A stretch of 33,654 nucleotides of DNA, from positions 17,739,204-17,772,857 of the forward strand of contig NC_068984.1 in assembly GCF_001194135.2 (NCBI RefSeq). Direction: 5' to 3'. The position numbers and the translations under genes were made by a program. This DNA is from Octopus bimaculoides. Taxonomy: Eukaryota. Positions within the stretch are counted from its first letter, which is position 1; every line of letters begins with the position of its first letter. Shown here piece after piece: positions 3,691 through 31,381 of the stretch. The notes beneath the pieces are model-generated. The model did no database searches. It saw nothing but the letters and a program-made list of their open reading frames with translations, and was not told the origin of the DNA.

Positions 3691-4013
3691 GACAGTGAGG
3701 AAGGCAAGGAGGGGGTAAAGTCTAAAAATGAAATAGAGATGTAGAGAAAGAGATGATGCGAGAGAGAGTGAGACTTGAAAAAAGAGATGTGAAGCATAAG
3801 GAAAGGAAGAAATAACAAAGGTGTTGAAGATGAATAGGAGAGGAAGAGGAAAAGAGGAGAAAGTGAGTGTTGGAGAGAATTAGAAAGTGGAATAAAGGAA
3901 TAGACTGACAAAGAAAAGGAGAGACCTGGAGTAAGAGTGAAAGAAAGGATGGAAGTAAATTAGAAGAGATAAGAGAGATACTGAGTTTAAGAATGTTTAG
4001 AGAGTGAGTGAAA

Positions 4014-4060
<47 letters not shown>

Positions 4061-4335
4061 AGAGAAAGAGGGAAAGAGAGAAGGAGAGAGGGAAAAAAAG
4101 CAGCTAAAAGAGAGGATGAAAAAGGTAAGATGGATCCAGTGAGAAAAAAAGTAATGAGGACCAAGATAGATAGGCAGACTGTTTGTGTGAGAGAGAGAAG
4201 GAGAGAGAGATAAAGAGAGAGAGAGATGGGGAGAGAGATAAAGAGAGAGAGAGATGGGGAGAGAGAAAAAGAAAGAGAGAGAGATGAAGAGAGAGATAAA
4301 GAGAGAGAGAGAGTATGTGTGTGTGTGTGTGCATA
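3691..4335. repeat. GA-rich low-complexity tract with (GA)n and (GT)n
   Basis: Directly visible; source of the overlapping Ser/Leu- and Glu/Arg-rich ORFs. Confidence 0.9.
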
Positions 4336-4466
4336 AAATAAAGGCACAAAGAAATTGAGAGACCGTGTATGTGTGTGTACATGTTGTGCATGACTGTGTC
4401 TGATTATGTTTCCAAATTTTTCTTTGAGACATACCCTTGGAATAAACATTCCCTCCTGTTACACCA

Positions 4467-4597
4467 AATTCTGCCAGATCAGATTGGAGTTTGGTGCAGC
4501 CTTCTGGCTTGCCAGTCCTCAATCAAACCATCCAACCCATGCCAGCATGGAAAGTGGACGTTAAATGATGATGATGATGATGATGATGACGATGATG
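4467..4597 (+). mobile_element. Family-A SINE, 5'-truncated
   Basis: CTGCCAGATCAGATTGGAG...AACCCATGCCAGCATGGAAAGTGGACGTTAAA(TGA)n. Confidence 0.9.
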
Positions 4598-4642
4598 AAC
4601 TTGTACCTTGAGGGGAAGCCCTGATACATCTTCACATCCCAT

Positions 4643-4674
<32 letters not shown>

Positions 4675-4842
4675 CTCTGACCAAGGTAACCATGTAACTA
4701 TCTCTTCTACAGCAAGAAATCTCTTTCTGCCCTTCTATTGTAGTTTAACCTCTCGTCAACCAACACAAAGCCACCTCTCTCAATACTACAGCCCCCTCTC
4801 AGTTGTGGGGCCTTTGTGCTTTGCATATTACTTGGTAACCTC

Positions 4843-5031
4843 ACTGGTACTGGTGTGCCATGAAAAAAGTACCCACAGGCTGGGCATCCAAGCATAGGAA
4901 ACATACCAAAGCAGACAGAAGAATTTGGCACAGTGATTTGGCTAGCCAGCCCCTATCAAACGATCTAACCCATGCCAGCATGGAAAATAGAAATTATGTG
5001 ATGATGATGATGGTGATGGTGATGGTGATGA
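4843..5031 (+). mobile_element. Family-A-related SINE, diverged
   Basis: GGGCATCCAAGC and AACCCATGCCAGCATGGAAAA with a GAT/GGT tail. Confidence 0.7.
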
Positions 5032-6154
5032 TAAGAACGTTTTTTTAGCAGTTGTTGATTCATCATGAAGAAGACTACTTGAAATTTTATAAATACTTAA
5101 ATTTTGATAGCCTACTTTTGTCTGTGATAAAGAAATATTAATATTCTAAGTACAGATTAGATTAATCTTGGTCTAATAAATATTTTAAATTTCAGTACTG
5201 ATAAACCATCTTCAATTATGTATGCAGTATAAATCGCCAAGAAAAGAATGGACTTAGAGGATTAAGCCTGAATCCAGAATGTAATCTTAAGTAATTATAT
5301 AAAGTCAGTGAGAAGCGTAGGCTTGATTTTTGTCTGGTAATCACATGCCATATTTATTTGTATATAAGTGACACTCATGTGTAAGCTGCACTCATAAGTT
5401 GCACTCATATGTAAGCCACACCCTTAATTTAGTGTTAAATCTTGGTACAAAATCTGCTGATATTAGGGGTTGCGTTCTATACCTTGACCTGAGCATAGAA
5501 CAGGGCTCACCCCTTTGAGCTAGGAAGTGAATGAAATGCCTGATGTGTGTCTTGTAGCTACCCAACTCCTAAAGATAAAATGGAGAAAAGGCCTGGGTAG
5601 ATGTATACGGGTATATGTATATGTATATGGGTATATTTACAAAATCTTTATCCTTCATGGATTTTACTTTCATCTGAAATATTGGTTCCTCAATTTGAGA
5701 ATTCAGGAACTGAAACTGCAGTCTGAATGGTTCTGTAAACTTCTTACCTTTGTTTTTTGGATGTGTACTCAGAGACTTGTTTTATGAGTCAACTTATTGA
5801 CCATCTCGGGTCAAGATTGGTTCAACTGAGATAACCCACAAAATATCTTTTGTTTGCTGAGAACTAGTTAGCTTGGAAATTGTTATAAATATGGAACTCC
5901 AACAGAATTCTTCCTCACTCTCATTCTTACCTGTTCTCTCCCCACTTTTGACACCTGTAGCATGCCTGCTTTCTTTCCTCAAATCTGTGTCTCTCTCTCT
6001 TTGCTGGGTGCTTGCTGCAGAGGTGACATGCTTCTCTTACCCTTTCTACTTAACAGCTTTCAAAGAGGTCAATTCTCTTACTTTCCCTTTTACATTTTCC
6101 TTCAGACACATAGTTGTAAATAGCACTGATTATGATGGACAACAAAACCAGTCT

Positions 6155-6639
6155 TTATTTATTAGTTTCAAATTTTGATACAAGGCCAACATCATCATCA
6201 TTATCATCGTTTAACGTCCACTTTCCATGCTAGCATGGGTTGGACGATTTGACTGAGGACTGGTGAACCAGATGGCTACACCAGGCTCCAATCTGATTTG
6301 GCAGAGTTTCTACAACTGGATTCCCTTCCTAACACCAACCACTCCGAGAGTGTAGTGGGTGCTTTTACATGCCACCGGCACGAAGGCCAGTCAGGAGGTA
6401 CTGGCAACGGCCACGCTCGAAATGGTGTATTTTACGTGCCACCTGCAAAGGGGCCAGTTTTGGAGAAAACTGTAAGTGAATTACATCGACCCCAGTGGTC
6501 AACTGGTACTTATTTTATCAATCTTGAAAGGATAAAAAAGTTGTCCTCCTGTTGCATTTGAATTCAGAAGGTAAAAATGCTGCAAATGCTGCTAAGTATT
6601 TAGTCAGGTGCAATAACACACCTGCCAGCCTGCTACCTT
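6155..6639 (-). mobile_element. tRNA-derived SINE with Nin/Deu-like central domain, interrupted by a family-A SINE
   Basis: Reverse complement of GATAAAATAAGTACCAGTTGACCACTGGGGTCGATGTAAT at about 6480-6520; degraded head near 6620-6639; tail GGCCTTGT..AAATTTGAAAC near 6165-6189. Confidence 0.7.
6190..6458 (-). mobile_element. Family-A SINE, well preserved
   Basis: (CAT)n-CGTTTAACGTCCACTTTCCATGCTAGCATGGGTTGGACG..., the reverse complement of the family 3' end. Confidence 0.92.
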
Positions 6640-6821
6640 GATGTTGAAGTAAAAAGGTAAATGTAAACCCTGGATTCTGTAACTTAAACCACAGGATACT
6701 AGCAGACTTTCTATATTCACAACTTGAAGCAGTTGTGTATCTTGTAATGGTAAATAAACACCAATTTAACTATTATTTATTTCTTCTATCAATTATACCA
6801 CAGATTTTAAAATAGTGTCAC

Positions 6822-7150
6822 CTTACTGGCACATATGCCGGTGGCACGTGAAAATCAGCATTCGGGCATGATTGTTGTCAGTGCCGCTGAACTGGCTCCC
6901 ATGCAGGTAGCATGTAAAAACACCTTTTGAGCGTGGTCGTAACCAGAACTGCCTGACTGGCCTTTGTGCTGGTGGCACATAAAAAGCACCCACTACACTC
7001 TCGGAGTGGTTGGTGTTAGGAAGGGCATCCAGCTGTAGAAACTTTGCCAGATCAGATTGAGCTTGGTGCAGCCTCTGGCTCACCAGTCCTCAGTCAAACC
7101 ATCCAACCCATGCCAGCATGGAAAGCGGATGTTAAACGATGAATGATGAA
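6822..7150 (+). mobile_element. Family-A SINE with ~65-bp internal units
   Basis: Same layout as 20931-21408; ends GCATGGAAAGCGGATGTTAAACGATGAATGATGAA. Confidence 0.92.
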
Positions 7151-7345
7151 CATCAGTTTGTTACATCCATATAAGTTTTTGCCCAGTATTTTCAGTTAAA
7201 ATCAAGTATTCACGAGTTAATATGCTATACTTGGTCTACTTTGAGACGAAGAAATTTTCACCTCTTCCCCAATACAAGGAAATCTTTTTTCTTTTTTCCT
7301 GTGCCAGAGCTAAAAACCCCTGTTCATGATAAAACATCTCAAAAT

Positions 7346-7512
7346 ATTTATTTCTTTATTGTCCACAGGGGACTAAACATAGAGGGGACAAACAAGGACA
7401 GACAAAGGGATTAAGTTGATTACATCGACCCCAGTGCGTAACTGGTACTTAATTTATCGACCCCAAAAGGATGAAAGGCAAAATCGACCTCGGCGGAATT
7501 TGAACTCAGAAC
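7346..7512 (-). mobile_element. Nin/Deu-domain SINE, 5'-truncated and well preserved
   Basis: Reverse complement reads GTTCTGAGTTCAAATTCCGCCGAGGTCGATTTTGCCTTTCATCCTTTTGGGGTCGATAAATTAAGTACCAG. TAT lies at both junctions. Confidence 0.85.
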
Positions 7513-7575
7513 ATAATGTTTCTGCCAACTCATGGCCTTTATCTAAAAACATTGTACATATTTGGATACCACTTT

Positions 7576-7612
7576 TGGTTGTATTTCCAAAACTGTTTTG
7601 GAAATACAACCA
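7576..7612. repeat. Perfect 37-bp palindrome (18-bp arms, 1-nt centre)
   Basis: TGGTTGTATTTCCAAAAC-T-GTTTTGGAAATACAACCA. Confidence 0.97.
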
Positions 7613-7648
7613 GCATAATTCCTGTTTTCCTTTTGCAACTATTGCATC

Positions 7649-7709
7649 CTGTCAAACTGTCCAACCCATGCCAGCATGGAAGATGGACATTAGAAAAAAT
7701 GATGATGAT
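7649..7709 (+). mobile_element. Family-A SINE 3' tail only
   Basis: CTGTCAAACTGTCCAACCCATGCCAGCATGGAAGATGGAC..(GAT)3. Confidence 0.85.
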
Positions 7710-7904
7710 ATTGCCAGGTGCGCACGCCAATCATTCTCATCCAGTTAATGGTGCAATGGGTTCCTTTATTGTTTTTAAAATTTTCCTCATTCCTTCCTCA
7801 GTTCCAACACCTAAATCAAAATTTTTCCATGGGACAATCAACAAATCTTCTAGTGAAGTATATTTGTTAGGTATTGGTATTCTGATTTTATGTCTTTTAT
7901 TTTT

Positions 7905-8690
7905 ATGGAGTTCCCAATGTGTACCGCTTCGTTTGAAAACAACTCCATATAGTTCTTTGCGTAAAATCAGTATCAATCAACATTATACCTGGATTTTTCT
8001 GTTTAATTACAATTGCCAAGCCTCCCTTGGTGCTCCGTATAAACCGCAACACAAGAATCCCATTAAATCTCAACCATTTCCAAATTCTCAGACAAGATTT
8101 GAAAAATATCATCTCTAGTAGGTTCGTCAAATTCCTGGCAAAATAGAAACCATGTGAATATTTTGTTGTTGTGAATGAATTGATAGAGGCAGCCAGCTGT
8201 GCATTTTCACTAATGTCAGTCAATACATCAACACGAATAGCAAATTTAGAATTCTTTATACTTTCAAAAAAACACTTCTCAATATTAGCTGATACATCAG
8301 TTATCCTTCTCTGTATTGTATTCTCAGACAAAACAATTTTCATAATTTTTTGCTCAGCATCATCACCACACAATGAAAATGCTTGCAGGCTGAATCAATT
8401 CTTCTGCTATTGTATATGGTTTTTTGTCTATTGAGGAATCAATTCAGCCACTTGCTAAGACACAATCTGCATATTACCTGAGACTGAAACTTGTTTTTCT
8501 ACTGTCCAAAATGTCTTTCAAAATAATGAACGTCTTTGTTTGTCAGATGTTCGTATTTCTATCACAGACTCTCTTTTTGTCTTGCTTGGACCTGTATTGG
8601 AAATGGATAACTACACTCAACAGCTTAAACATATTCACTTGTTCATATTTTCATCTTCTGTTCATGAGAATTCAAGATTTTTGTAGTTAC
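7905..8690 (-). mobile_element. hAT (Buster/Charlie, ZBED5/ZBED8-like) transposase relic
   Basis: Frameshifted peptides QVAELI, KKPYTIAEELIQPA, VLSENTIQRRITDVS, FAIRVDVLTDIS (cf. FALQxDESTD), WDSCVAVYT and KQKNP. TIR-like GTTCCCAA at 7910-7917. Confidence 0.8.
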
Positions 8691-9134
8691 CCATTGATCC
8701 ATTCATGCATTTTCATCACCCACTATTCCTGGAAGTCTTCTAGCAGCAGAGTCCTCAGGCGCTTTTTCTACAGGGTCTTATCAGAAGCAACTGTCATTAC
8801 TCTTTCCTGTTGGATTCTCATGCATGACCAACTGAAACTATGAATATTATCCAATCATCATGTTCTTGATCTACCCCGAGGCCTCGTCCTCTTTGTAGGC
8901 TCAGCTTGAAGAATTTGTCTTGTGATCTTTTCCTGTAGCATTCTTACCACTTTTCTGTAATACTAGAGCTATGATCTCCCAATGCAAAGAAGTAAAAGCT
9001 TAACCTTGTGAGACTCCCTGATCTCTGTTTTATGCACCCTGTTATGTAACATTACTCCAGAGAACCTTCAAAGGAATCCCATTTCAGCCCCTTCTATTTG
9101 CAGTTGTACTCTTCTGGTCATTGCTCAACATTCA
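8690..9134 (-). mobile_element. RTE-clade (Expander/Rex3-like) LINE 3' fragment, pseudogenised
   Basis: Translation MTRRVQLQIEGAEMGFL*RFSGVMLHNRVHKTEIRES...RPRGRSRT matches the RTE C-terminus pattern IQAAEMxFLRR...RPRGRPRTRW. Multiple stops. Confidence 0.88.
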
Positions 9135-9470
9135 TCATCATCATCATCATCGTTTAACGTCCGCTTTCCATGCTAGCATGGGTTGGACGATTTGACTGAG
9201 GGCTGGCGAACCGGATGGCTGCACCAGGCTCCCATCTGATCTGGCAGAGTTTCTACAGCTGGATGCCCTTCCTAATGCCAACCACTCCGAGAGTATAGTG
9301 GGTGCTTTTACGTGCCACCGGCACGAGGGCCAGNNNNNNNNNNTGTGCCACCGGCACGAGGGCCATCCACGCGGTACTGGCAATGGCCATGCTCAAAATG
9401 GTGTATTTTACGTGCCACCTGCACAGGAGCCTGTCCAGTGGCACTGGCAACAACCTTGCTCGAATGACTT
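9131..9470 (-). mobile_element. Family-A SINE, well preserved (10-N gap with artefactual overlap at 9334-9343)
   Basis: (CAT)n-CGTTTAACGTCCGCTTTCCATGCTAGCATGG...GGATGCCCTTCCTAATGCCAACC. Confidence 0.92.
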
Positions 9471-9922
9471 TAAATGAAGATTGGCACAAAAACTAATTTG
9501 AAGATAACAAGTTTGACTTTTTTTACCAACTTCTCTTCTTCTGAAACATGAATGCTAAAATTGTCAAGTTACAATCTCAACACCTGCAATTTTAGCATCC
9601 ATTGGTTATCAACAAAGTTTAATTTTTTGGAAGGTATGCTTTCATTTACCAATTGCTTAAATTTCAATAGCTTGTCTTCAGCGCTCTGTTCTATTATTGG
9701 TTCTAATTCACTTCATGAACTCGAATCCTCTTCAGCATCATTTGTTTTGGAGAAACATTTATCTATGATCCATGAAAATGGGAAAAAAAAAATTATTTTA
9801 TTTCTAATACTAAACATAAATTTTGGTGAATAAATGTGATTTTCTTTGAATCTTCCTGTGCCACAGTTGTCATCTTTTCACACCGCATCAGTATGTGACT
9901 CATTGCCCCCTTTGGGAGCCAT
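9470..9922 (-). pseudogene. Unidentified degraded reading frame (MAPKGG...), possibly the 5' part of the 5927-7904 relic
   Basis: 150 codons from ATG (context ACAATGG) with 3 internal stops and no frameshift. Identity unknown. Confidence 0.35.
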
Positions 9923-10460
9923 TGTATTATATAAAGAGAACATACTACACAAACAAACAAACAAACACACACACACGCACGCGTGCGCACACACAAACAT
10001 TTGTGCATACGAGGAGAAATGATAATAAGGAAGACATTATTTTATATCAGCTCCTACTTTACTGAACTGATAACAATTCTCATACACATGTGATATTGTC
10101 TGCAAATCATTGATATATCTAAATGGAAAGCAATGATGGCTAAAACATAAAAGCACCATAGAACATGATATCGCAGAAGGACTTTTTTTTCTTTCAGAAA
10201 ATAGCCAGAAGAGACATATTACCAGTTTAAAATGGGGGAAAGTAAAAGTTCCAATTACAAGTGCAATGTGACTGAAATACGATTCCTTTGTCTATTTTTG
10301 TTTTTTCTTTTTGGGGTTTTGTTGATTGGTTGTTTTTTTTATAAATGTTCAGAGTTTTGCATTTAAAAAACAAAACAAAACAAAACAATATAGATGTGAA
10401 ATGTTTTCACATCCATCCAACATTAGACAACATGGCTGCTAAGATAAAAGTAAATGTGCG

Positions 10461-10511
10461 TTACTACTACTACTACTACTACCACCACCACCACCACCAC
10501 CCACCAACACC

Positions 10512-10910: not shown

Positions 10911-11320
10911 TGGCTGTGTGGTAAGTAGCTTGCTTACCAACCACATGGTTCTGGGTTCAGTCCCGCTGCGTGGCACCTTGGGCAAGTGTCTTCTACTATA
11001 GCCTCGGGTCGACCAAAGCCTTGTGAGTGAATTTGCTAGACGGAAACAAAAAGAAGCCCGTCGTATATATGTATATATATGTATATGTATATATATATGT
11101 ATGTATGTTTGTGTGTCTGTGTTTGTCTCCCCAACATCACTTGACAACCGATGATGGTGTGCTTACATCCCCGTAACTTAGCGGTTTGGCAAAAGAGACC
11201 GATAGAATAAGTACTAGGCTCACAAACAATAAGTCCTGGGGTCGATTTGCTCGACTAAAGGCAGCGCTCCAGCATGGCCGCAGTCAAATGACTGAAACAA
11301 GTAAAAGAGTAAAAGAGTAA
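10911..11320 (+). mobile_element. Family-B composite tRNA-SINE (tRNA head, CORE-like segment, internal (TA/TG)n, Nin-like second half, (AGTAAAAG)n tail)
   Basis: A box TGGCTGTGTGG at 10911-10921, B box GGTTCAGTCCC at 10954-10964, CCTTGGGCAAGT motif. Near-identical copy at 24117-24525. Confidence 0.9.
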
Positions 11321-12519: not shown

Positions 12520-12571
12520 CAACTTCAGCAGTAACAGCAGCACCAGACGCAGTTACAACAAGGTGGTAGTA

Positions 12572-12605
<34 letters not shown>

Positions 12606-12897
12606 CACGGTGGTGGTACTAGTGGTGGTGGTGGTTGTGGTGGTTATAGTATCACTTGCCGTCATTGTTGCTGTTGTTGTTGTTGCTGTAGTGGTGGTTG
12701 TACTGGTGGTTGTGTTGGTAATGGCAGTAGTAGTGTAGTCATAGCAGTAGTACTGGTGATGGTTATGGAGGTAGTAGTAAGAGCAGTAGTAGTAGTAGGA
12801 GGAGGAGGAGGAGGAGGAGGAGGAGCAGTGGCAGCAGTGGTGTAGAGGTGGAGGTCGTGGTAGTAGTAGTAGTGGTAGTGGTGATGGCGGTGGTGTA

Positions 12898-12938
<41 letters not shown>

Positions 12939-14085
12939 CACGGTGGTGGTACTAGTGGTGGTGGTGGTTGTGGTGGTTATAGTATCACTTGCCGTCATTG
13001 TTGCTGTTGTTGTTGTTGCTGTAGTGGTGGTTGTACTGGTGGTTGTGTTGGTAATGGCAGTAGTAGTGTAGTCATAGCAGTAGTACTGGTGATGGTTATG
13101 GAGGTAGTAGTANNNNNNNNNNNNNNNNNNNNNNNNNNNNNNNNNNNNNNNNNNNNNNNNNNNNNNNNNNNNNNNNNNNNNNNNNNNNNNNNNNNNNNNN
13201 NNNNNNNNNNNNNNNNNNNNNNNNNNNNNNNNNNNNNNNNNNNNNNNNNNNNNNNNNNNNNNNNNNNNNNNNNNNNNNNNNNNNNNNNNNNNNNNNNNNN
13301 NNNNNNNNNNNNNNNNNNNNNNNNNNNNNNNNNNNNNNNNNNNNNNNNNNNNNNNNNNNNNNNNNNNNNNNNNNNNNNNNNNNNNNNNNNNNNNNNNNNN
13401 NNNNNNNNNNNNNNNNNNNNNNNNNNNNNNNNNNNNNNNNNNNNNNNNNNNNNNNNNNNNNNNNNNNNNNNNNNNNNNNNNNNNNNNNNNNNNNNNNNNN
13501 NNNNNNNNNNNNNNNNNNNNNNNNNNNNNNNNNNNNNNNNNNNNNNNNNNNNNNNNNNNNNNNNNNNNNNNNNNNNNNNNNNNNNNNNNNNNNNNNNNNN
13601 NNNNNNNNNNNNNNNNNNNNNNNNNNNNNNNNNNNNNNNNNNNNNNNNNNNNNNNNNNNNNNNNNNNNNNNNNNNNNNNNNNNNNNNNNNNNNNNNNNNN
13701 NNNNNNNNNNNNNNNNNNNNNNNNNNNNNNNNNNNNNNNNNNNNNNNNNNNNNNNNNNNNNGTTGCAATAGTGGTGGTGGTGATAGTGGTGACAACAGTA
13801 GTGGCAGTAGTTGTGGTGGTGGTGGTGGTGGTGGTGGTGGTGGTGGTGGTGGCAGTGGTTGTGATGGTAGTCAGAGTGGTGCTACTTGTGGTGGTGGTGC
13901 TGCTATTAATACTGCTACTGCTTCTAGCAGTGGCATTGTTGTTGTAATTGTCGTAGTGGTGTTGGTGTTGGTGTGGTGGTAGTGATGGAGATAGTGATAG
14001 TGGTGATGATTTGGTGGTAGCTGTAACGAGGATGGTGATAATGATGATAACAATGATGATGATGATGATGATGATGATGATAAAT
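12520..14085. repeat. Complex GTA/GTG/GTT/GAT trinucleotide tract with an identical ~205-bp tandem duplication (about 12575-12779 and 12910-13112) and an N-gap at 13113-13761
   Basis: Directly visible. Confidence 0.9.
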
Positions 14086-16689: not shown

Positions 16690-16923
16690 AAAAGGAGGCG
16701 GTGGAGGAAGAGGAAAAGCAGAAGGAAGAGGAGGGGGAGGAGAAGAAGGAGGAGAGAGAAGAAGAAGAAGGAGGAGGAGGAGGAGGAGGAGGAGAAGAAT
16801 AAGAAGGAAGAGAAGGAGAAGAAGGAAGAGAAGGAGAAGAAGAAGAAGAAGAAGAAGAAGAAGAAGAAGAAGAAGAAGAAGAAGGAAGAGAAGGAGAAGA
16901 AAAAAAGGAGGAGGAAGAAGAAG
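16690..16923. repeat. (GAA)n/(GGA)n tract running into N-gap 16924-17656
   Basis: Directly visible. Confidence 0.95.
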
Positions 16924-17844
16924 NNNNNNNNNNNNNNNNNNNNNNNNNNNNNNNNNNNNNNNNNNNNNNNNNNNNNNNNNNNNNNNNNNNNNNNNNNNNN
17001 NNNNNNNNNNNNNNNNNNNNNNNNNNNNNNNNNNNNNNNNNNNNNNNNNNNNNNNNNNNNNNNNNNNNNNNNNNNNNNNNNNNNNNNNNNNNNNNNNNNN
17101 NNNNNNNNNNNNNNNNNNNNNNNNNNNNNNNNNNNNNNNNNNNNNNNNNNNNNNNNNNNNNNNNNNNNNNNNNNNNNNNNNNNNNNNNNNNNNNNNNNNN
17201 NNNNNNNNNNNNNNNNNNNNNNNNNNNNNNNNNNNNNNNNNNNNNNNNNNNNNNNNNNNNNNNNNNNNNNNNNNNNNNNNNNNNNNNNNNNNNNNNNNNN
17301 NNNNNNNNNNNNNNNNNNNNNNNNNNNNNNNNNNNNNNNNNNNNNNNNNNNNNNNNNNNNNNNNNNNNNNNNNNNNNNNNNNNNNNNNNNNNNNNNNNNN
17401 NNNNNNNNNNNNNNNNNNNNNNNNNNNNNNNNNNNNNNNNNNNNNNNNNNNNNNNNNNNNNNNNNNNNNNNNNNNNNNNNNNNNNNNNNNNNNNNNNNNN
17501 NNNNNNNNNNNNNNNNNNNNNNNNNNNNNNNNNNNNNNNNNNNNNNNNNNNNNNNNNNNNNNNNNNNNNNNNNNNNNNNNNNNNNNNNNNNNNNNNNNNN
17601 NNNNNNNNNNNNNNNNNNNNNNNNNNNNNNNNNNNNNNNNNNNNNNNNNNNNNNNNACTCATCTAGGAAGCTACTTAGAATCTCTTTGCCACTGTCTAGA
17701 AATGGTCCATTGTAATGTGAATAAAAACTACTTATTTAGTTCAAAAGCTTCCTCTGTGAAGCCATCTTCTCTTTTGTTCTCCAAGTAAAAAGAATTTACG
17801 TTGATTTTTTTTTTCCTTTTTCCTTTTTTGCGAAAGAAAATATC

Positions 17845-18160
17845 TGTTTTGTTTCACTCATTGGATTGCAGCCATGCCGGGACACCACCTTGAATAAATT
17901 TTAGTCAAGCGAATTGACCCTAGCAGTTTTTTTTTTTAAGCCTGGTACTTACTTATCTTTTACTTGTTTCAGTCATTGGACTGTGGCCATGCTGGGGCAC
18001 CACTTTGAAAGGGCTAGTCAAACTAATCAACCCTTATTCTTATTTTAAAGTCTGATACTTATTTTATCGGTCTCTTTGCCAAACTGCCAAGTTACAGGGA
18101 TGTAAACAAACCAGCACTGGTATGGAAGTGGGACAAGCTCAAAGATACACACACACATAA
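17845..18160 (-). mobile_element. Two tandem degraded copies of the 3' half of the family-B SINE
   Basis: TCTTTTACTTGTTTCAGTCATTGGACTGTGGCCATGCTGG and TATCGGTCTCTTTGCCAAAC are reverse complements of 11150-11320 motifs. Confidence 0.75.
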
Positions 18161-22090: not shown

Positions 22091-23096
22091 TCAGGTCATT
22101 AAGAATGAAATGTCTGATTTTGAACTAAAAGTTTATTTTACTTTATCTCAACAAAAAGCAATGCAGTTAATCAAAGTATGTATCTAAATTATCAACACAA
22201 TTTTGCCATTTTATTGGTAGCTTATGTTTGCCAGAAGCGAAAAATTCTGGAGAGCAAGTAGTGAAGAAATCATGAAAGGCTGTTTTTACATCTTCTTCAG
22301 ATTTGAAGATTTTACCTTGCAAAAAGTTGTCTAATGCCTGGAAAACATGATAGTCAATTGGTGCAAGGTCTGGTGAATATGGTGGATGACAGAGTACTTC
22401 CAAGTTCAGTTCTTGTAACTTGGGTAGTGTTCTTTGTGCAACATGTAGTCGAGTATTGTCTGGCAAGAGAATTGGCCTGTCTCTATTGACCAATCTCGTT
22501 TGTTTAATTGCATATTCACTCATCATTTCATCCATAACAATACAATGCAAAAATGGTTTGCTTTTATGCCGTGACAGCAAAGAACAGCAAGTTTCAAGAC
22601 AACGTGTCATTTGATACTCGTTCAGTTCATGTGGTACCCACCTGTCCAGCTTCTTTACCTTGCCAATTTGTTTCAGATGGTCCAATACAGTTGGAATTGA
22701 AACATCAAACCTTGCTGCTAATTCATGCATAGAGATGTATCCGCTTCCACTACAGTTTCCAGCTCATCATTATCCACCTTGGTCTCAGATCTATCACGGG
22801 GCTGATCTTCACCAAACACCTCATTGATGTTTCAAGATGTCTGGGATGTATTGGTTCCACGACGGAACTCATATTCATAAACAACACAAATTTTTGATCT
22901 AGCCATGAGTTCACAAAAATTAATTTACAAGAGAAAACTCACAATATAATCAGACACAATGAATTGCATTTCGGAAAGTGATGATGTAACCCTTCACTGC
23001 AGCAAAAACAAAGAATTGTCACCATAAAACATTTGAGTTAATGACTGTCAAATTTGGTGCATAAGAAAATCGGACATTTCATTCTTAATGACCTGA
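22091..23096 (-). mobile_element. mariner (DD34D, Hsmar1/cecropia-like) element, internally deleted
   Basis: 31-bp TIRs TCAGGTCATTAAGAATGAAATGTC(T/C)GATTTT at 22091-22121 and 23066-23096. TA on the right flank, TT on the left. Confidence 0.92.
22167..22906 (-). pseudogene. mariner transposase pseudogene
   Basis: MARSKICVVYEYEFRRGT start; WVPHEL and HPPYSPDLAP motifs; D34D spacing intact; stop at 22832-22834; frameshift near 22735; two internal deletions. Confidence 0.92.
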
Positions 23097-24116: not shown

Positions 24117-24525
24117 GGCGTAGGAGTGGCTGTGTGGTAAGTAGCTTGCTTACAAACCACATGGTTCTGGGTTCAGTCCCACTGCGTGGCACCTTGGGCA
24201 AGTGTCTTCTACTATAGCCTTGGGCCGACCAAAGCCTTGTGAGTGGATTTGGTAAACGGAAACTGAAAGAAGCCCGTCGTATATATGTATATATATGTAT
24301 GTGTGTGTATATGTTTGTATGTCTGTGTTTGTCCCACCAACATCGCTTGAAAACTGATGCTGGTGTGTTTACGTCCCCGTAACTTAGCGGTTCAGCAAAA
24401 GAGACCGATAGAATAAGTACTAGGCTTCCAAACAATAAGTCCTGGGGTCGATTTGCTCGACTAAAGGCGGTGCTCCAGCATGGCCACAGTCAAATGACTG
24501 AAACAAGTAAAAGAGTAAAAGAGTA
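24117..24525 (+). mobile_element. Family-B composite tRNA-SINE, full length
   Basis: GGCGTAGGAGTGGCTGTGTGG head; colinear with 10911-11320. Confidence 0.92.
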
Positions 24526-25339: not shown

Positions 25340-26232
25340 GAAAGAGAGAGAAATATGCTACGGAAGCATTTCTGGACTCCTTTTTTGAGATAATGAACAG
25401 CTGCCTCATTGCATTCTCTTAAATTTCCTTGAAGTCTTGAAATCCTTTAAAGAGGAATTCCTTTCAAACCTTGGTTTTGGGATCGTAGCCATTGACCCAT
25501 GATTCATCACCTGTTAGGACTGTTTTCAAAAAGTTTTCATCTTCCTCGACATGATCAAGGAAATCCTGCACAACTGAAACTCAATCTCCTTCTTGAGATG
25601 ATCACACTCTACACACTTTAATTCCAAGCACTAATGAAAGTACGTGAGAATTTTATAGCTTAGCGTGCATAAGTTTAAGATCAATCTGTACCAGGTGGCT
25701 TCACTCTGCTTACTTTAGCTTTGTTGCCATAACAAAAGTCCTGATATTTTTTTTATCAGACCTTATATATAAATTTGTGTGTTCTTTTTAACAATTGCTT
25801 TGAGTTTTCTTTACAGATAGGAAAGATAAAAAGGTGTCAAAATCTTTGCTGAAATCTAAGGTAGTTAAAATGACAAATAATAAAAATACTAAAAATTTTG
25901 TTCAATATTATCTTAACAACATTCACAGCACACAAAGATGACATTGTTAAGAAAGCAAAGCAATGCATAAATATTGTAATGATACTCGTGGACATCACAT
26001 TTGGTGAGCATAAAGAAACAACCATGTTAGCATATAAGCAATAAATTAGACACAGCATAACGCTTCTCTCTGCTTTCACCAATCTTTCTGCCAAAAAGAA
26101 AAAAACTCACACCTAACTATAATTATCATGAAATAGTGCATTTTGCATCTATACAGGCTGCGCATACAGATCCTACGCACAGATCACCTACAAAATGAAA
26201 CAACAGATTCATAAAATGAATATCAACTACTG

Positions 26233-28035: not shown

Positions 28036-28129
28036 TCTTTTTTAATTTCTTTTATTTTGTTTTATTTTTAGATAGATTCTGTGATAGTCAAACTGCAGAA
28101 TAATGATAGTTACTATGGTAACGATGATA

Positions 28130-28135
28130 ATAAAG

Positions 28136-28170
<35 letters not shown>

Positions 28171-29523
28171 GAGAGGAGTAGGAGGAAGATGAGGAAGGAG
28201 GAGGAAGAGGAAGAGGATGAGGAAGTGGAAGAAGAGGAAGAGGATGAGGATGAGGATGAGGAAGAAGAGGAGGAAGTGGAAGAAGAGGAGGAGGAAGAGG
28301 AGGAGGAAGTGGAAGAATAGGAGGAAGAATAGGAGGAAGAATAGGAGGAAGAGGAGGAGGAAGTGGAAGAATTGGAGGAAGAATAGGAGGAAGAATAGGA
28401 GGAAGAACAGGAGGAAGAATAGGAGGAAGAATAGGAGGAAGAGGAGGAAATGGAAGAAGAGGAGGAGGAAGAAGATTGGGAAAAAAAGGCGGAATAAGAA
28501 GGAGGAGGAAGTAAAGAAGGAGGAGGAGGAGGTGGAGGAGGAGGAGGAAGAAGATTGGGAAAAAAAGGCGGAATAAGAAGAAGGAGGAGGAAGNNNNNNN
28601 NNNNNNNNNNNNNNNNNNNNNNNNNNNNNNNNNNNNNNNNNNNNNNNNNNNNNNNNNNNNNNNNNNNNNNNNNNNNNNNNNNNNNNNNNNNNNNNNNNNN
28701 NNNNNNNNNNNNNNNNNNNNNNNNNNNNNNNNNNNNNNNNNNNNNNNNNNNNNNNNNNNNNNNNNNNNNNNNNNNNNNNNNNNNNNNNNNNNNNNNNNNN
28801 NNNNNNNNNNNNNNNNNNNNNNNNNNNNNNNNNNNNNNNNNNNNNNNNNNNNNNNNNNNNNNNNNNNNNNNNNNNNNNNNNNNNNNNNNNNNNNNNNNNN
28901 NNNNNNNNNNNNNNNNNNNNNNNNNNNNNNNNNNNNNNNNNNNNNNNNNNNNNNNNNNNNNNNNNNNNNNNNNNNNNNNNNNNNNNNNNNNNNNNNNNNN
29001 NNNNNNNNNNNNNNNNNNNNNNNNNNNNNNNNNNNNNNNNNNNNNNNNNNNNNNNNNNNNNNNNNNNNNNNNNNNNNNNNNNNNNNNNNNNNNNNNNNNN
29101 NNNNNNNNNNNNNNNNNNNNNNNNNNNNNNNNNNNNNNNNNNNNNNNNNNNNNNNNNNNNNNNNNNNNNNNNNNNNNNNNNNNNNNNNNNNNNNNNNNNN
29201 NNNNNNNNNNNNNNNNNNNNNNNNNNNNNNNNNNNNNNNNNNNNNNNNNNNNNNNNNNNNNNNNNNNNNNNNNNNNNNNNNNNNNNNNNNNNNNNNNNNN
29301 NNNNNNNNNNNNNNNNNNNNNNNNNNNNNNNNNNNNNNNNNNNNNNNNNNNNNNNNNNNNNNNNNNNNNNNNNNNNNNNNNNNNNNNNNNNNNNNNNAAG
29401 AAGAAGAAGAAGAAGAAGAAGAAGAAGAAGAAGAAGAAGAAGGAGAAGAAGAAAGAGGAGAAGAAGAAGAAGAAGAAGAAGAAGAAGAAGAAGGAGAAGA
29501 AGAAGGAGGAGGAGGAGGAGGAG
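28130..29523. repeat. (GAT)n, (GAG/GAA)n and GAGGAAGAATAG units around N-gap 28594-29397
   Basis: Directly visible. Confidence 0.95.
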
Positions 29524-29777
29524 TATAGTGAGAAGGTTGCTTCTCAACAAGACTTACACTTAGTTATTTCACTAATTAACTACACCATTTAGGTCTAGTT
29601 GATTATAATAAACTAACACAACACTACAATAATAACAGAAGACATGAAATGGTTGTGTTCATCTTTTCAAGTCCCTCCTTAAGCATTATGTCTGTTCCTT
29701 CCTCTCTTGAACAACAGGTCTTTGGAATTCTTTCCCTGCATGATTTTCCTGCTTTTACCAACTTGTAACTCCTTTAA

Positions 29778-29995
29778 CCCTTTAGCATTTAAACCGACCA
29801 TATCTGGTCAAAACATCCTGATTGTTCTATTAAAACTGACCAAATCTAGTTTCTTAATTCTATTCTAAAATGTCATTCTAAAAATAAACAGTCACATCGG
29901 GAAAATCTAAAAGCCACGAGATAAAGTATTATTATTTCAGAACTTTGGGAATAAACAAGCATTACATTTCAGGGAGCAGTCTGAATGCTAACTTG
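29778..29995. mobile_element. piggyBac-type MITE, older copy with degraded right TIR
   Basis: TTAA-CCCTTTAGCATTTAAACC start; colinear with 31590-31810. Confidence 0.7.
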
Positions 29996-30654
29996 AATAT
30001 TAAATGCATCAGTTTCACCATTCTTGTAGGGTCTAGTAAAGGCCATAGGTACAGCCTCTTCTTCCAGACCAAACCAGCAACAGATAAATAAATAAATAAA
30101 TGAATGAATGAATGAATGAATAAGTAAATGAATGAATGAAAGTATGAATTGATTAATAAAGATGAAAAGAAAAGCAATGTAACAGAATCTTCAAGTTGAT
30201 TAATCAAGTTAAGAGGGAGTCAATCATTGCAAAGTTTGTGTAAGGTAGGGGTTGTTTAGATATGATGTAAAGAAACTATAGAAGGTAGATCTCTGGTCAC
30301 AACCATATTTCATAGAATTTCAAACTATTGTTTCTAAAGCACTGGTTTGTTTATAAATATCATATGTACTATTAGACGGTTTCAGTATATATGCGTAAAA
30401 TTTGGCTGAAATTGATCGGTGAGTGTTTGGCCCAGTCGGATGCACATGTAACCATGTAAGTGTTGATATGTGGAATCGATTCTGGCTAGGGTTAGCTCAT
30501 CATTTTCCAGTAAATTTGTTTAGATATAAGTATTGCTTTAAATCAAAGAATATATATTATCATTATGTTATATCATTATAGTTATTATTGTACTAATAGA
30601 CTTCCATAGTCGCTTTCTCTCCATAACATACAAAGCCTTCTGATATGTTTATAA

Positions 30655-31108
30655 ATATTATATATATATGTATGTATGTATATATATATATATATATATA
30701 TATNNNNNNNNNNNNNNNNNNNNNNNNNNNNNNNNNNNNNNNNNNNNNNNNNNNNNNNNNNNNNNNNNNNNNNNNNNNNNNNNNNNNNNNNNNNNNNNNN
30801 NNNNNNNNNNNNNNNNNNNNNNNNNNNNNNNNNNNNNNNNNNNNNNNNNNNNNNNNNNNNNNNNNNNNNNNNNNNNNNNNNNNNNNNNNNNNNNNNNNNN
30901 NNNNNNNNNNNNNNNNNNNNNNNNNNNNNNNNNNNNNNNNNNNNNNNNNNNNNNNNNNNNNNNNNNNNNNNNNNNNNNNNNNNNNNNNNNNNNNNNNNNN
31001 NNNNNNNNNNNNNNNNNNNNNNNNNNNNNNNNNNNNNNNNNNNNNNNNNNNNNNNNNNNNNNNNNNNNNNNNNNNNNNNNNNNNNNNNATATATATATAT
31101 ATATATAT
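30655..31108. repeat. (TA)n flanking N-gap 30704-31088
   Basis: Directly visible. Confidence 0.95.
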
Positions 31109-31381
31109 AGTTTTAGGGAAAATAACCAATTTTCAAGAACTTATCGATGAAAATCCACTATCACATATAGAAAAATTAATAATTAAAAGCACAATAAATG
31201 AGTATAATATAAAGTAAAGTAAATATCATAAGATAAAATTCTTGAAAGGCAGGGCCCCAGCATGGCTTCAGTTTAATGGCTGCAACGAATAAAAGTATAA
31301 AAGAGTTATCAGCCGACATCATGTTTTCCTTAGAATTTAGAACATAACCTAAAGACAGGCTGGAAATATTTAGGGAAGGAA

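What the first reader, a model, noticed from the sequence alone, without database searches (positions are those of the whole stretch)
5927..7904. Hidden fossil reading frame that rejoins in frame once four SINE insertions are removed
Seen: after deleting 7649-7709, 7346-7512, 6822-7150 and 6155-6639 at their natural SINE boundaries, the minus strand reads KNKRHKIRIPIPNKYTSLEDLLIVPWKNFDLGVGTEEGMRKILKTIKEPIAPLTG*E*LACAPGN/DAIVAKGKQELCWLYFQNSFGNTTKSGIQICTMFLDKGHELAETL/YFEMFYHEQGFLALAQEKRKKISLYWGRGENFFVSK*TKYSILTREYLILTENTGQKLIWM*QTD/GDTILKSVV*LIEEINNS*IGVYLPLQDTQLLQVVNIESLLVSCGLSYRIQGLHLPFYFNI/RLVLLSIIISAIYNYVSEGKCKRESKRIDLFESC*VERVREACHLCSKHPAKRERHRFEERKQACYRCQKWGENR*. That is about 310 codons with 7 internal stops and no frameshift inside any piece; a rough expectation for DNA this AT-rich is 15-20 stops. 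The ORF track cannot show it. Inference: an old intronless coding sequence, such as an endogenous viral element, an unrecognised transposon ORF or a retrocopy. I do not recognise the family. Stop-poor frames continue to about 5400 but the correct frame there is ambiguous. Caveats: I picked the best frame in each piece, junctions have 1-3 nt of microhomology ambiguity, and purine skew lowers stop counts.
Basis: partly seen in the sequence, partly recalled or inferred. Interest (0 to 1): 0.78.

Follow-up and report, generated by a model that had tools for sequence, protein, structure and literature searches.

The report
Dead hAT transposon gene, misread frame
The stretch holds the decayed remains of an ordinary cut-and-paste (hAT-type) transposon gene, later riddled with SINE insertions, as is common in octopus-like genomes.

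Summary

- **What it is:** a decayed hAT-superfamily transposase gene of the Buster / ZBED5 / FAM200 type.
- **Solid part:** It matches residues 39-402 of ~596-residue comparators (profile E 1e-21) and carries about 6 frameshifts and 12 in-frame stops.
this is the only piece with significant homology, and the homology is in another frame. That frame has seven stops (hhalign P 1.4e-7).
none shows significant homology in any frame. There are only weak, collinear hints.
- **SINE-type repeats:** the four are real.
- **Stop poverty is not diagnostic:** 34% of control piece sets from the same window do as well, and the opposite strand does better.

Verdict: an ordinary dead transposon copy of low interest.

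The parts
5460..8670 (-). Decayed hAT-superfamily (Buster/ZBED5-FAM200-type) transposase gene, from first to last recognisable base. It is solid for about 7690-8670 and probable for about 5460-5740.
   Evidence: Exhaustive HMMER search gave 162 hits at E<=1e-3. Full-length hits carry zf-BED, DUF4371 and Dimer_Tnp_hAT. Sources name them ZBED5-like, FAM200A/B-like and SCAND3-like, and the nearest are Octopus fragments. Supporting alignments: tblastn, profile of 127 intact comparators at E 1e-21, frameshift-aware alignment.
8500..8670 (-). N-terminal region of the fossil, corresponding to the BED-type zinc-finger part of the comparators (profile positions about 12-90).
   Evidence: P0134 residues 39-98 align here. 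The profile match 12-212 starts at about 8680. The zinc ligands were not checked one by one.
7690..8500 (-). RNase-H-like catalytic core with its inserted helical domain (comparator residues about 90-402).
Evidence: Piece 1 alone scores 24.3 against the profile with 0 of 300 shuffles as good; hhalign gives probability 94% and P 1.4e-7 at profile 329-378. 15 of 29 family-invariant columns are retained.
5460..5740 (-). Probable C-terminal (hAT dimerisation) region of a hAT transposase, matching comparator residues about 477-587.
   Evidence: tblastn best score 29.3 bits, reached by 1 of 200 shuffles with all 127 comparators. Frameshift-aware score 62 against a maximum of 46 in 100 shuffles. Profile methods place it at the same positions but are not significant: HMM p 0.09, hhalign P 0.24.
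5927..7904 (-). It holds five non-repeat pieces separated by four SINE-type repeats. Only the piece nearest 7904 is demonstrably part of the fossil gene.
9112..9471. Neighbouring SINE-type repeat copy upstream of the fossil, outside the gene.
   Evidence: It recurs up to 10 times in the window and in L001.

Best explanation
**What is there.** The minus strand carries the dead remains of a hAT-superfamily DNA transposon's transposase gene, of the Buster family type. Vertebrate annotators call relatives of this type ZBED5, FAM200 or SCAND3.

**How it worked when alive (inferred from established knowledge of the hAT family, not shown here).**
- A roughly 600-residue enzyme has an N-terminal BED zinc finger that binds the element's ends.
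- Its RNase-H-like DDE core, interrupted by a helical insertion domain, cuts and pastes the element.
- A C-terminal domain mediates oligomerisation.
- Insertion makes 8-bp target duplications.

**What is shown here.** The copy is inert.
- The N-terminal two thirds (about 8670-7690) still align to intact relatives at about 35% identity.
- That part carries about 12 in-frame stops, about 6 frameshifts and about 10 small indels.
- Four SINE-type retroposon copies and about 0.75 kb of unassignable sequence follow.
- A probable C-terminal remnant lies at about 5740-5460.
- About 75-95 codons of the family's middle region are unaccounted for.

The continuous 310-codon frame is mostly a by-product of taking the most stop-poor of three frames in each short piece of purine-rich DNA. 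It coincides with the weakly hinted frame in at most two of five pieces. In the one piece that can be tested, it is the wrong frame.
For: - **Search.** An exhaustive HMMER search with window:7906-8394:- gave 162 hits at E<=1e-3.
- **Domains.** Full-length hits of about 590 residues carry zf-BED, DUF4371 and Dimer_Tnp_hAT.
- **Names.** Sources call them ZBED5-like, FAM200A/B-like or SCAND3-like. The nearest are fragments from Octopus bimaculoides and O. sinensis.
- **Collinear alignments in three phases.** P0005 residues 105-379 and P0134 residues 39-402 align collinearly.
- **Profile.** A profile of 127 intact comparators gives E 1e-21 over profile positions 12-212, with further segments up to position 381.
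- **Piece 1.** The true frame scores 24.3 with 0 of 300 shuffles as good, and hhalign gives P 1.4e-7.
- **Conserved columns.** 15 of 29 family-invariant columns are kept, against 37% identity overall.
- **C-terminal remnant.** 1 of 200 and 0 of 100 shuffles match it.
- **Insertions.** The four are interspersed repeats.
- **Structures.** The comparator profile weakly reaches the Hermes hAT transposase structures 2BW3, 6DWW and 4D1Q (E 0.045-0.07).
- **Literature.** ZBED5 is Buster1 of the Buster family of hAT (PMC3606216). hAT families and abundant SINEs (11.6% of the genome) are reported in Octopus vulgaris (PMC13282606).
Against: - No terminal inverted repeats or 8-bp target duplications were found, so the ends of the element are not defined.
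- Pfam itself does not score any frame of the window.
- The C-terminal remnant rests on pairwise alignments to a few comparators. Profile methods place it correctly but without significance.
- Pieces 2-5 remain unassigned.
- Only distant paralogues (about 60% DNA identity over 270-410 bases) could be fetched. Copy number and family limits are therefore unknown.
Confidence: 0.85

Rival explanations
1. There are two tandem hAT fossils in the same orientation, each internally deleted.
Pieces 2 and 3, read in one shared phase, would hold its C-terminal dimerisation motifs.

For: Each hint is weak, but they are collinear and correctly spaced.
- Piece 2 matches profile 519-533 (P 0.14).
- Piece 3 matches 547-563 (P 0.049), in the same phase as piece 2.
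- Piece 5 matches 53-64 (P 0.094).
- About 5890-5830 matches 381-400 (P 0.5).
- About 5740-5460 matches 477-587.

tblastn with many comparators puts the hits at tight protein positions.
Against: - None of the hints in pieces 2, 3 and 5 beats shuffles (p 0.08-0.5).
- There is no DNA similarity between the parts that would be duplicated.
- The motif in piece 2 lies inside a perfect 18-nt inverted repeat, so half of it is a copy of the other strand.
- The first fossil's recognisable part ends at profile position about 379. The stretch at about 5890 starts at 381. That fit suits a single copy split by inserted material equally well.
Confidence: 0.3
2. It is a pseudogene of a domesticated, host-owned hAT-derived gene (a FAM200/ZBED5-like gene) rather than a dead copy of a mobile element.
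For: - The nearest named proteins are annotated as host genes: FAM200A-like and ZBED5-like in Octopus.
- No transposon ends were found.
Against: - The octopus relatives are short fragments scattered over different chromosomes and scaffolds. Two broken pieces lie side by side in L002. That is the pattern of a repeat family, not of a single-copy gene.
- Those names are transferred automatically from vertebrates.
- hAT families are reported in octopus repeat libraries (PMC13282606).
Confidence: 0.1
3. One continuous frame of about 310 codons, restored by removing four SINEs, belongs to an endogenous viral element, a retrocopy or an unknown transposon ORF.
For: - The translations and stop count reproduce.
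- Only 2.2-2.5% of dinucleotide shuffles are as stop-poor.
Against: - The frame in piece 1 contradicts significant homology in another frame.
- 34% of real control piece sets are as stop-poor, and the opposite strand is more so.
- No viral or host-gene homologue appeared. Every hit examined is hAT-type or a chimera containing hAT.
- Pfam finds nothing in any of the six frames.
Confidence: 0.03

Closest known systems
Buster family of the hAT transposon superfamily (ZBED5/Buster1, ZBED8, SCAND3/ZBED9, FAM200A/B and their transposon relatives)
   Same: All best full-length hits are of this type. They are about 590-600 residues long with the domain order zf-BED, DUF4371 / FAM200-ZBED5 RNase-like, then the hAT C-terminal region. 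The fossil aligns collinearly to residues 39-402, and probably to 477-587. PMC3606216 places ZBED5 in the Buster family.
   Different: This copy is dead, with many stops, frameshifts, insertions and at least one internal deletion. Its ends (inverted repeats, 8-bp duplication) were not found. No tree was built, so placement in Buster rather than Ac rests on best hits only.
Octopus 'FAM200A-like' and 'ZBED5-like' gene models (XP_014779403.1, XP_014779908.1, XP_029656088.1, XP_029654477.1)
   Same: These are the nearest relatives found, at 41-57% protein identity over 65-90 residues. They come from the same kind of genome and are themselves fragments of hAT transposase genes.
   Different: DNA identity is only about 60% over 270-410 bases, so they belong to different and older-diverged families.
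Hermes transposase (Musca domestica; PDB 2BW3, 4D1Q, 6DWW), the structural reference for hAT enzymes
   Same: The profile of the fossil's intact relatives reaches Hermes weakly. One match runs collinearly across the core and the C-terminal region (profile 144-565 to chain 71-497; E 0.045-0.07).
   Different: Hermes belongs to the Ac family. Similarity is at the limit of detection, and the fossil itself was not compared with it.
Octopus SINE families (reported as 11.6% of the O. vulgaris genome, PMC13282606)
   Same: The four removed stretches recur 7-10 times in 33 kb plus one unrelated 20-kb octopus locus. Identity to other copies reaches 90-97%.
   Different: ARAGORN and Rfam found no tRNA-like head or known RNA family in them.

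Membership tests
hAT superfamily transposon (Buster family) | Transposase homologous to the hAT RNase-H-like core with its inserted helical domain | tested here: met
   Profile of 127 intact comparators gives E 1e-21, with further segments to profile position 381. tblastn sum E is 2e-19. hhalign P is 1.4e-7 for profile 329-378. 15 of 29 invariant columns are kept.
hAT superfamily transposon (Buster family) | N-terminal BED-type zinc finger | tested here: inconclusive
   Comparator residues 39-98 align at about 8670-8500 within a significant HSP and within profile 12-212. The individual zinc ligands were not scored.
hAT superfamily transposon (Buster family) | C-terminal hAT dimerisation domain (PF05699) | tested here: inconclusive
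   The comparators have it. In the window, about 5740-5460 matches residues 477-587 with shuffle p about 0.005. Profile methods are not significant. Weak alternative hints lie in pieces 2 and 3.
hAT superfamily transposon (Buster family) | Readable DDE catalytic triad and open reading frame (an active member) | tested here: not met
   There are about 12 in-frame stops and about 6 frameshifts in 321 alignable codons. Four repeat insertions and a missing middle segment add to the damage. It is a fossil, not a working copy. This does not bear on descent from the family.
hAT superfamily transposon (Buster family) | Short terminal inverted repeats flanked by 8-bp target-site duplications | tested here: inconclusive
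   An inverted-repeat scan of 4900-9200 found only repeat-to-repeat pairs and weak pairs of 72-79% identity. The ends cannot be located without close copies.
hAT superfamily transposon (Buster family) | Groups with Buster rather than Ac relatives | tested here: inconclusive
   All named best hits are ZBED5, ZBED8, SCAND3 or FAM200 types, which PMC3606216 assigns to Buster. No phylogeny was made.
Endogenous viral element | Homology to a viral protein | tested here: not met
The exhaustive search of 1.84 billion representatives returned hAT-type proteins wherever hits were examined. Pfam found nothing in any of the six frames.
Processed retrocopy of a host gene | Homology to an intron-containing host gene, with a poly(A) tail and target duplications | tested here: not met
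   The only homologues are transposase-derived. No poly(A) tract bounds the region in the sequence read.
SINE (the four removed stretches) | Short interspersed repeat present in many dispersed copies | tested here: met
   There are 7-10 further copies in the window and in L001, with up to 97% identity between copies.
SINE (the four removed stretches) | Head derived from a small RNA gene (tRNA, 5S or 7SL) with a polymerase III promoter | tested here: inconclusive
   ARAGORN and Rfam at gathering thresholds found nothing in 4000-10500. Degenerate heads would escape both.

The most novel reading that the evidence does not exclude
It could be a separate, still unclassified element that landed inside the hAT copy before the SINEs did. 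This stretch includes a perfect 18-nt inverted repeat. Alternatively, the locus could record a tandem pair of deletion derivatives of one hAT family.
Probability: 0.08. Interest if true: 0.2.

Novelty: new member of a known kind. Interest (0 to 1): 0.1.

Why it matters
Biologically it matters little. A dead hAT copy overrun by SINEs is what repeat-rich cephalopod genomes are made of.

Its value is methodological.
- Choosing the most stop-poor frame piece by piece in purine-rich DNA picked a frame that homology contradicts in the one piece that could be tested.
- Ordinary pieces of the same window, and the opposite strand, look as good or better by that measure.
- Phase continuity across removed insertions is not evidence when the boundaries are chosen by eye.

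Tried and rejected
- **Pfam.** A scan of all three minus frames of 5300-9800 and all three plus frames of 5300-7910, with stops marked X, found nothing relevant.
- **Word-indexed protein search.** A search with 7906-8394 found nothing. The exhaustive search was needed.
- **Profile of intact comparators against each piece.**
- **tblastn of 127 comparators against each piece.** With 200 shuffles, only piece 1 and 5300-5926 passed.
- **Frameshift-aware alignment of C-terminal halves.** Only 5300-5926 passed. Run with whole proteins, it gave scattered positions at scores of 46-51, so those scores are noise.
- **Octopus paralogue loci L001-L004.** They are too distant, and they show nothing for pieces 2-5.
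- **DNA comparison between putative duplicated parts.** No similarity.
- **Inverted-repeat scan for transposon ends.** Nothing convincing.
- **tRNA and Rfam scans of the repeats.** Nothing.
- **A possible N-terminal piece at 9470-9800.** This lead came from memory and was not supported.
- **Coding on the plus strand.** Considered because that strand is very stop-poor. Rejected because there is no homology and the translation is pyrimidine-driven.
- **Handling of profiles and consensus.** The alignment tool printed a majority-consensus line of the comparators unasked. It was not used as a query and is not copied here. A local scoring profile was deleted after use.
Full report
**Setting.**
The window is repeat-rich, AT-rich DNA with many copies of a few short interspersed repeats and long microsatellite blocks. 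The nearest protein relatives of anything coding in the region come from Octopus bimaculoides and O. sinensis. One repeat copy is 90% identical to a copy in an unrelated O. bimaculoides locus. The source is therefore very probably an octopus or a close relative. The exact species was not determined.

**Check of the observation.**
- The five minus-strand pieces translate exactly as quoted. They hold 8 stops in 311 codons, which is 7 internal and the final one.
Each recurs 7-10 times elsewhere in the window or in locus L001.
Three differ by roughly 20-60 bases.

**Is the stop-poor frame more than chance?**
For that procedure, dinucleotide shuffles give 13.6 +/- 2.4, and 2.2-2.5% reach 8 or fewer.
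- Sets of real pieces of the same lengths, drawn from the rest of the window without simple repeats, reach 8 or fewer in 34% of draws.
- The opposite strand of the same five pieces has only 3 stops in its best frames.
- That strand has no homology to anything, and its translation is simply pyrimidine-driven.
- Stop poverty therefore does not identify a coding frame here.
- The phase agreement is not an independent test either.

**What is there.**
- Reading the minus strand just upstream of the finding suggested the middle of a hAT-type transposase. That lead came from memory.
- The test was an exhaustive HMMER search of 1.84 billion representative proteins with the stop-free stretch 7906-8394. 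It gave 162 hits at E<=1e-3.
- Full-length hits are about 590 residues long. They carry zf-BED, DUF4371 and the hAT C-terminal dimerisation domain.
- Their sources call them ZBED5-like, FAM200A/B-like, ZBED8-like or SCAND3-like.
- The closest hits, at 41-57% identity, are short octopus gene models.
- PMC13282606 reports hAT families and very abundant SINEs (11.6% of the genome) in Octopus vulgaris.

**Anatomy of the fossil.**
- Intact comparators were aligned to the window as it stands. They match collinearly from about 8670 to about 7690 on the minus strand, in three different phases.
- A frameshift-aware protein-to-DNA alignment covers residues 39-402 of the 596-residue P0134 at 35% identity.
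- That alignment has about 6 frameshifts, about 12 in-frame stops and about 10 gap openings. Other comparators, over shorter spans, give 2-5 frameshifts and 1-9 stops.
- 15 of the 29 family-invariant columns in the aligned range are retained, against 37% identity overall. Real descent followed by neutral decay would give this pattern.
- No repeat insertion lies inside this part.

| Piece | Result |
|---|---|
| 1, homologous frame (seven stops) | profile score 24.3, 0 of 300 shuffles as good; hhalign probability 94%, P 1.4e-7, profile 329-378 |
| 2-5, any frame or strand | shuffle p 0.08-0.5, by profile, by 127 pairwise comparators, or by frameshift-aware alignment |

- The hints in pieces 2, 3 and 5 are weak but positionally sensible.
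- The motif in piece 2 lies inside a perfect 18-nt inverted repeat, which weakens it further.

**Downstream of the finding.**
- The minus strand at about 5740-5460 matches the C-terminal region of several comparators (residues 477-587).
- The best tblastn score is reached by 1 of 200 shuffles when all 127 comparators are used.
- The frameshift-aware score of 62 exceeds the maximum of 46 in 100 shuffles.
- HMMER and hhalign place the match at the same profile positions but without significance.
- I rate this as a probable C-terminal remnant. It carries 1 stop, no frameshift and 4 gaps.

**Two models of the whole locus.**
- **Model (a), one fossil.** Its recognisable N-terminal part ends at profile position about 379. 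It resumes near 5890 at position about 381, though that resumption is itself only a P 0.5 hint. About 1.8 kb of later material splits it, made of the four repeats and pieces 2-5.
- **Model (b), two fossils.** Two tandem, internally deleted copies. Pieces 2-3 close the first, and piece 5 opens the second.
- The putative duplicated parts share no DNA similarity.
- No transposon ends were found.
- The octopus paralogues that could be fetched are too distant to delimit the element. They show about 60% DNA identity over 270-410 bases, all inside about 8030-8590.
- I favour (a) or an undecidable mixture, and give (b) about 0.3.
- Under either model, about 75-95 codons of the family's middle region are unaccounted for.

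**How it works.**
- It no longer does; that much is shown by the break counts.
- What it once did is inferred from established knowledge of hAT elements. They move by cut-and-paste transposition using a BED-finger, DDE-type enzyme that makes 8-bp target duplications.
- The profile of its intact relatives reaches the Hermes transposase structures only weakly (E 0.045-0.07).

**Verdict.**
- The frame spelled out, its extent and the in-frame rejoining are not supported. The endogenous-virus and retrocopy options are not supported either.
- The object is an ordinary dead member of a known transposon family.

- Breaks are counted, not located.
- The alignment tool printed a consensus line of the comparators on its own. 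It was neither used nor copied.
- A local scoring profile was deleted after use.

Noticed in passing
It is unique in the window and in the four octopus loci fetched. It makes both strands of that piece read alike and partly creates the 'FW' motif hint. Its origin is unknown.
   Followed up: partly
window about 8750-8950, minus strand: Just upstream of the hAT fossil, one frame reads like the C-terminal tail of a non-LTR retrotransposon ORF. This recognition is from memory only. If real, it bears on where the hAT element's 5' end lies.
   Followed up: no
window 22194-22478 and 25470-25620, minus strand: There are weak protein matches (E 2e-5 to 7e-3) to parts of chimeric transposase-containing proteins from the first search. 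The second place matches the region next to the Tc1/mariner-type helix-turn-helix domains of P0052. These are probably other transposon fossils.
   Followed up: partly
window 30679-31109: A long, almost perfect inverted repeat has arms of about 213 nt that are 97-100% complementary and 1 nt apart. It sits in a very AT-rich block.
   Followed up: no
window 10911-11319 and 24127-24525: Two direct copies of a roughly 400-nt repeat (90-91% identical) lie 13.2 kb apart. This is a different repeat family from those inside the finding.
   Followed up: no
window 12560-14000, 16700-18000, 28100-31000: Large microsatellite or minisatellite blocks show extreme GC skew or very low GC content (down to 12.5%). 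At least one run of N is visible in a repeat copy starting at 13759.
   Followed up: no
L002 10001-10918 and 12079-13131 (Octopus sinensis VCDQ01013367.1): Two adjacent gene models both match the same middle part of hAT transposases (residues about 148-449 and 160-474 of P0134). This looks like another broken or duplicated hAT fossil annotated as two genes.
   Followed up: partly
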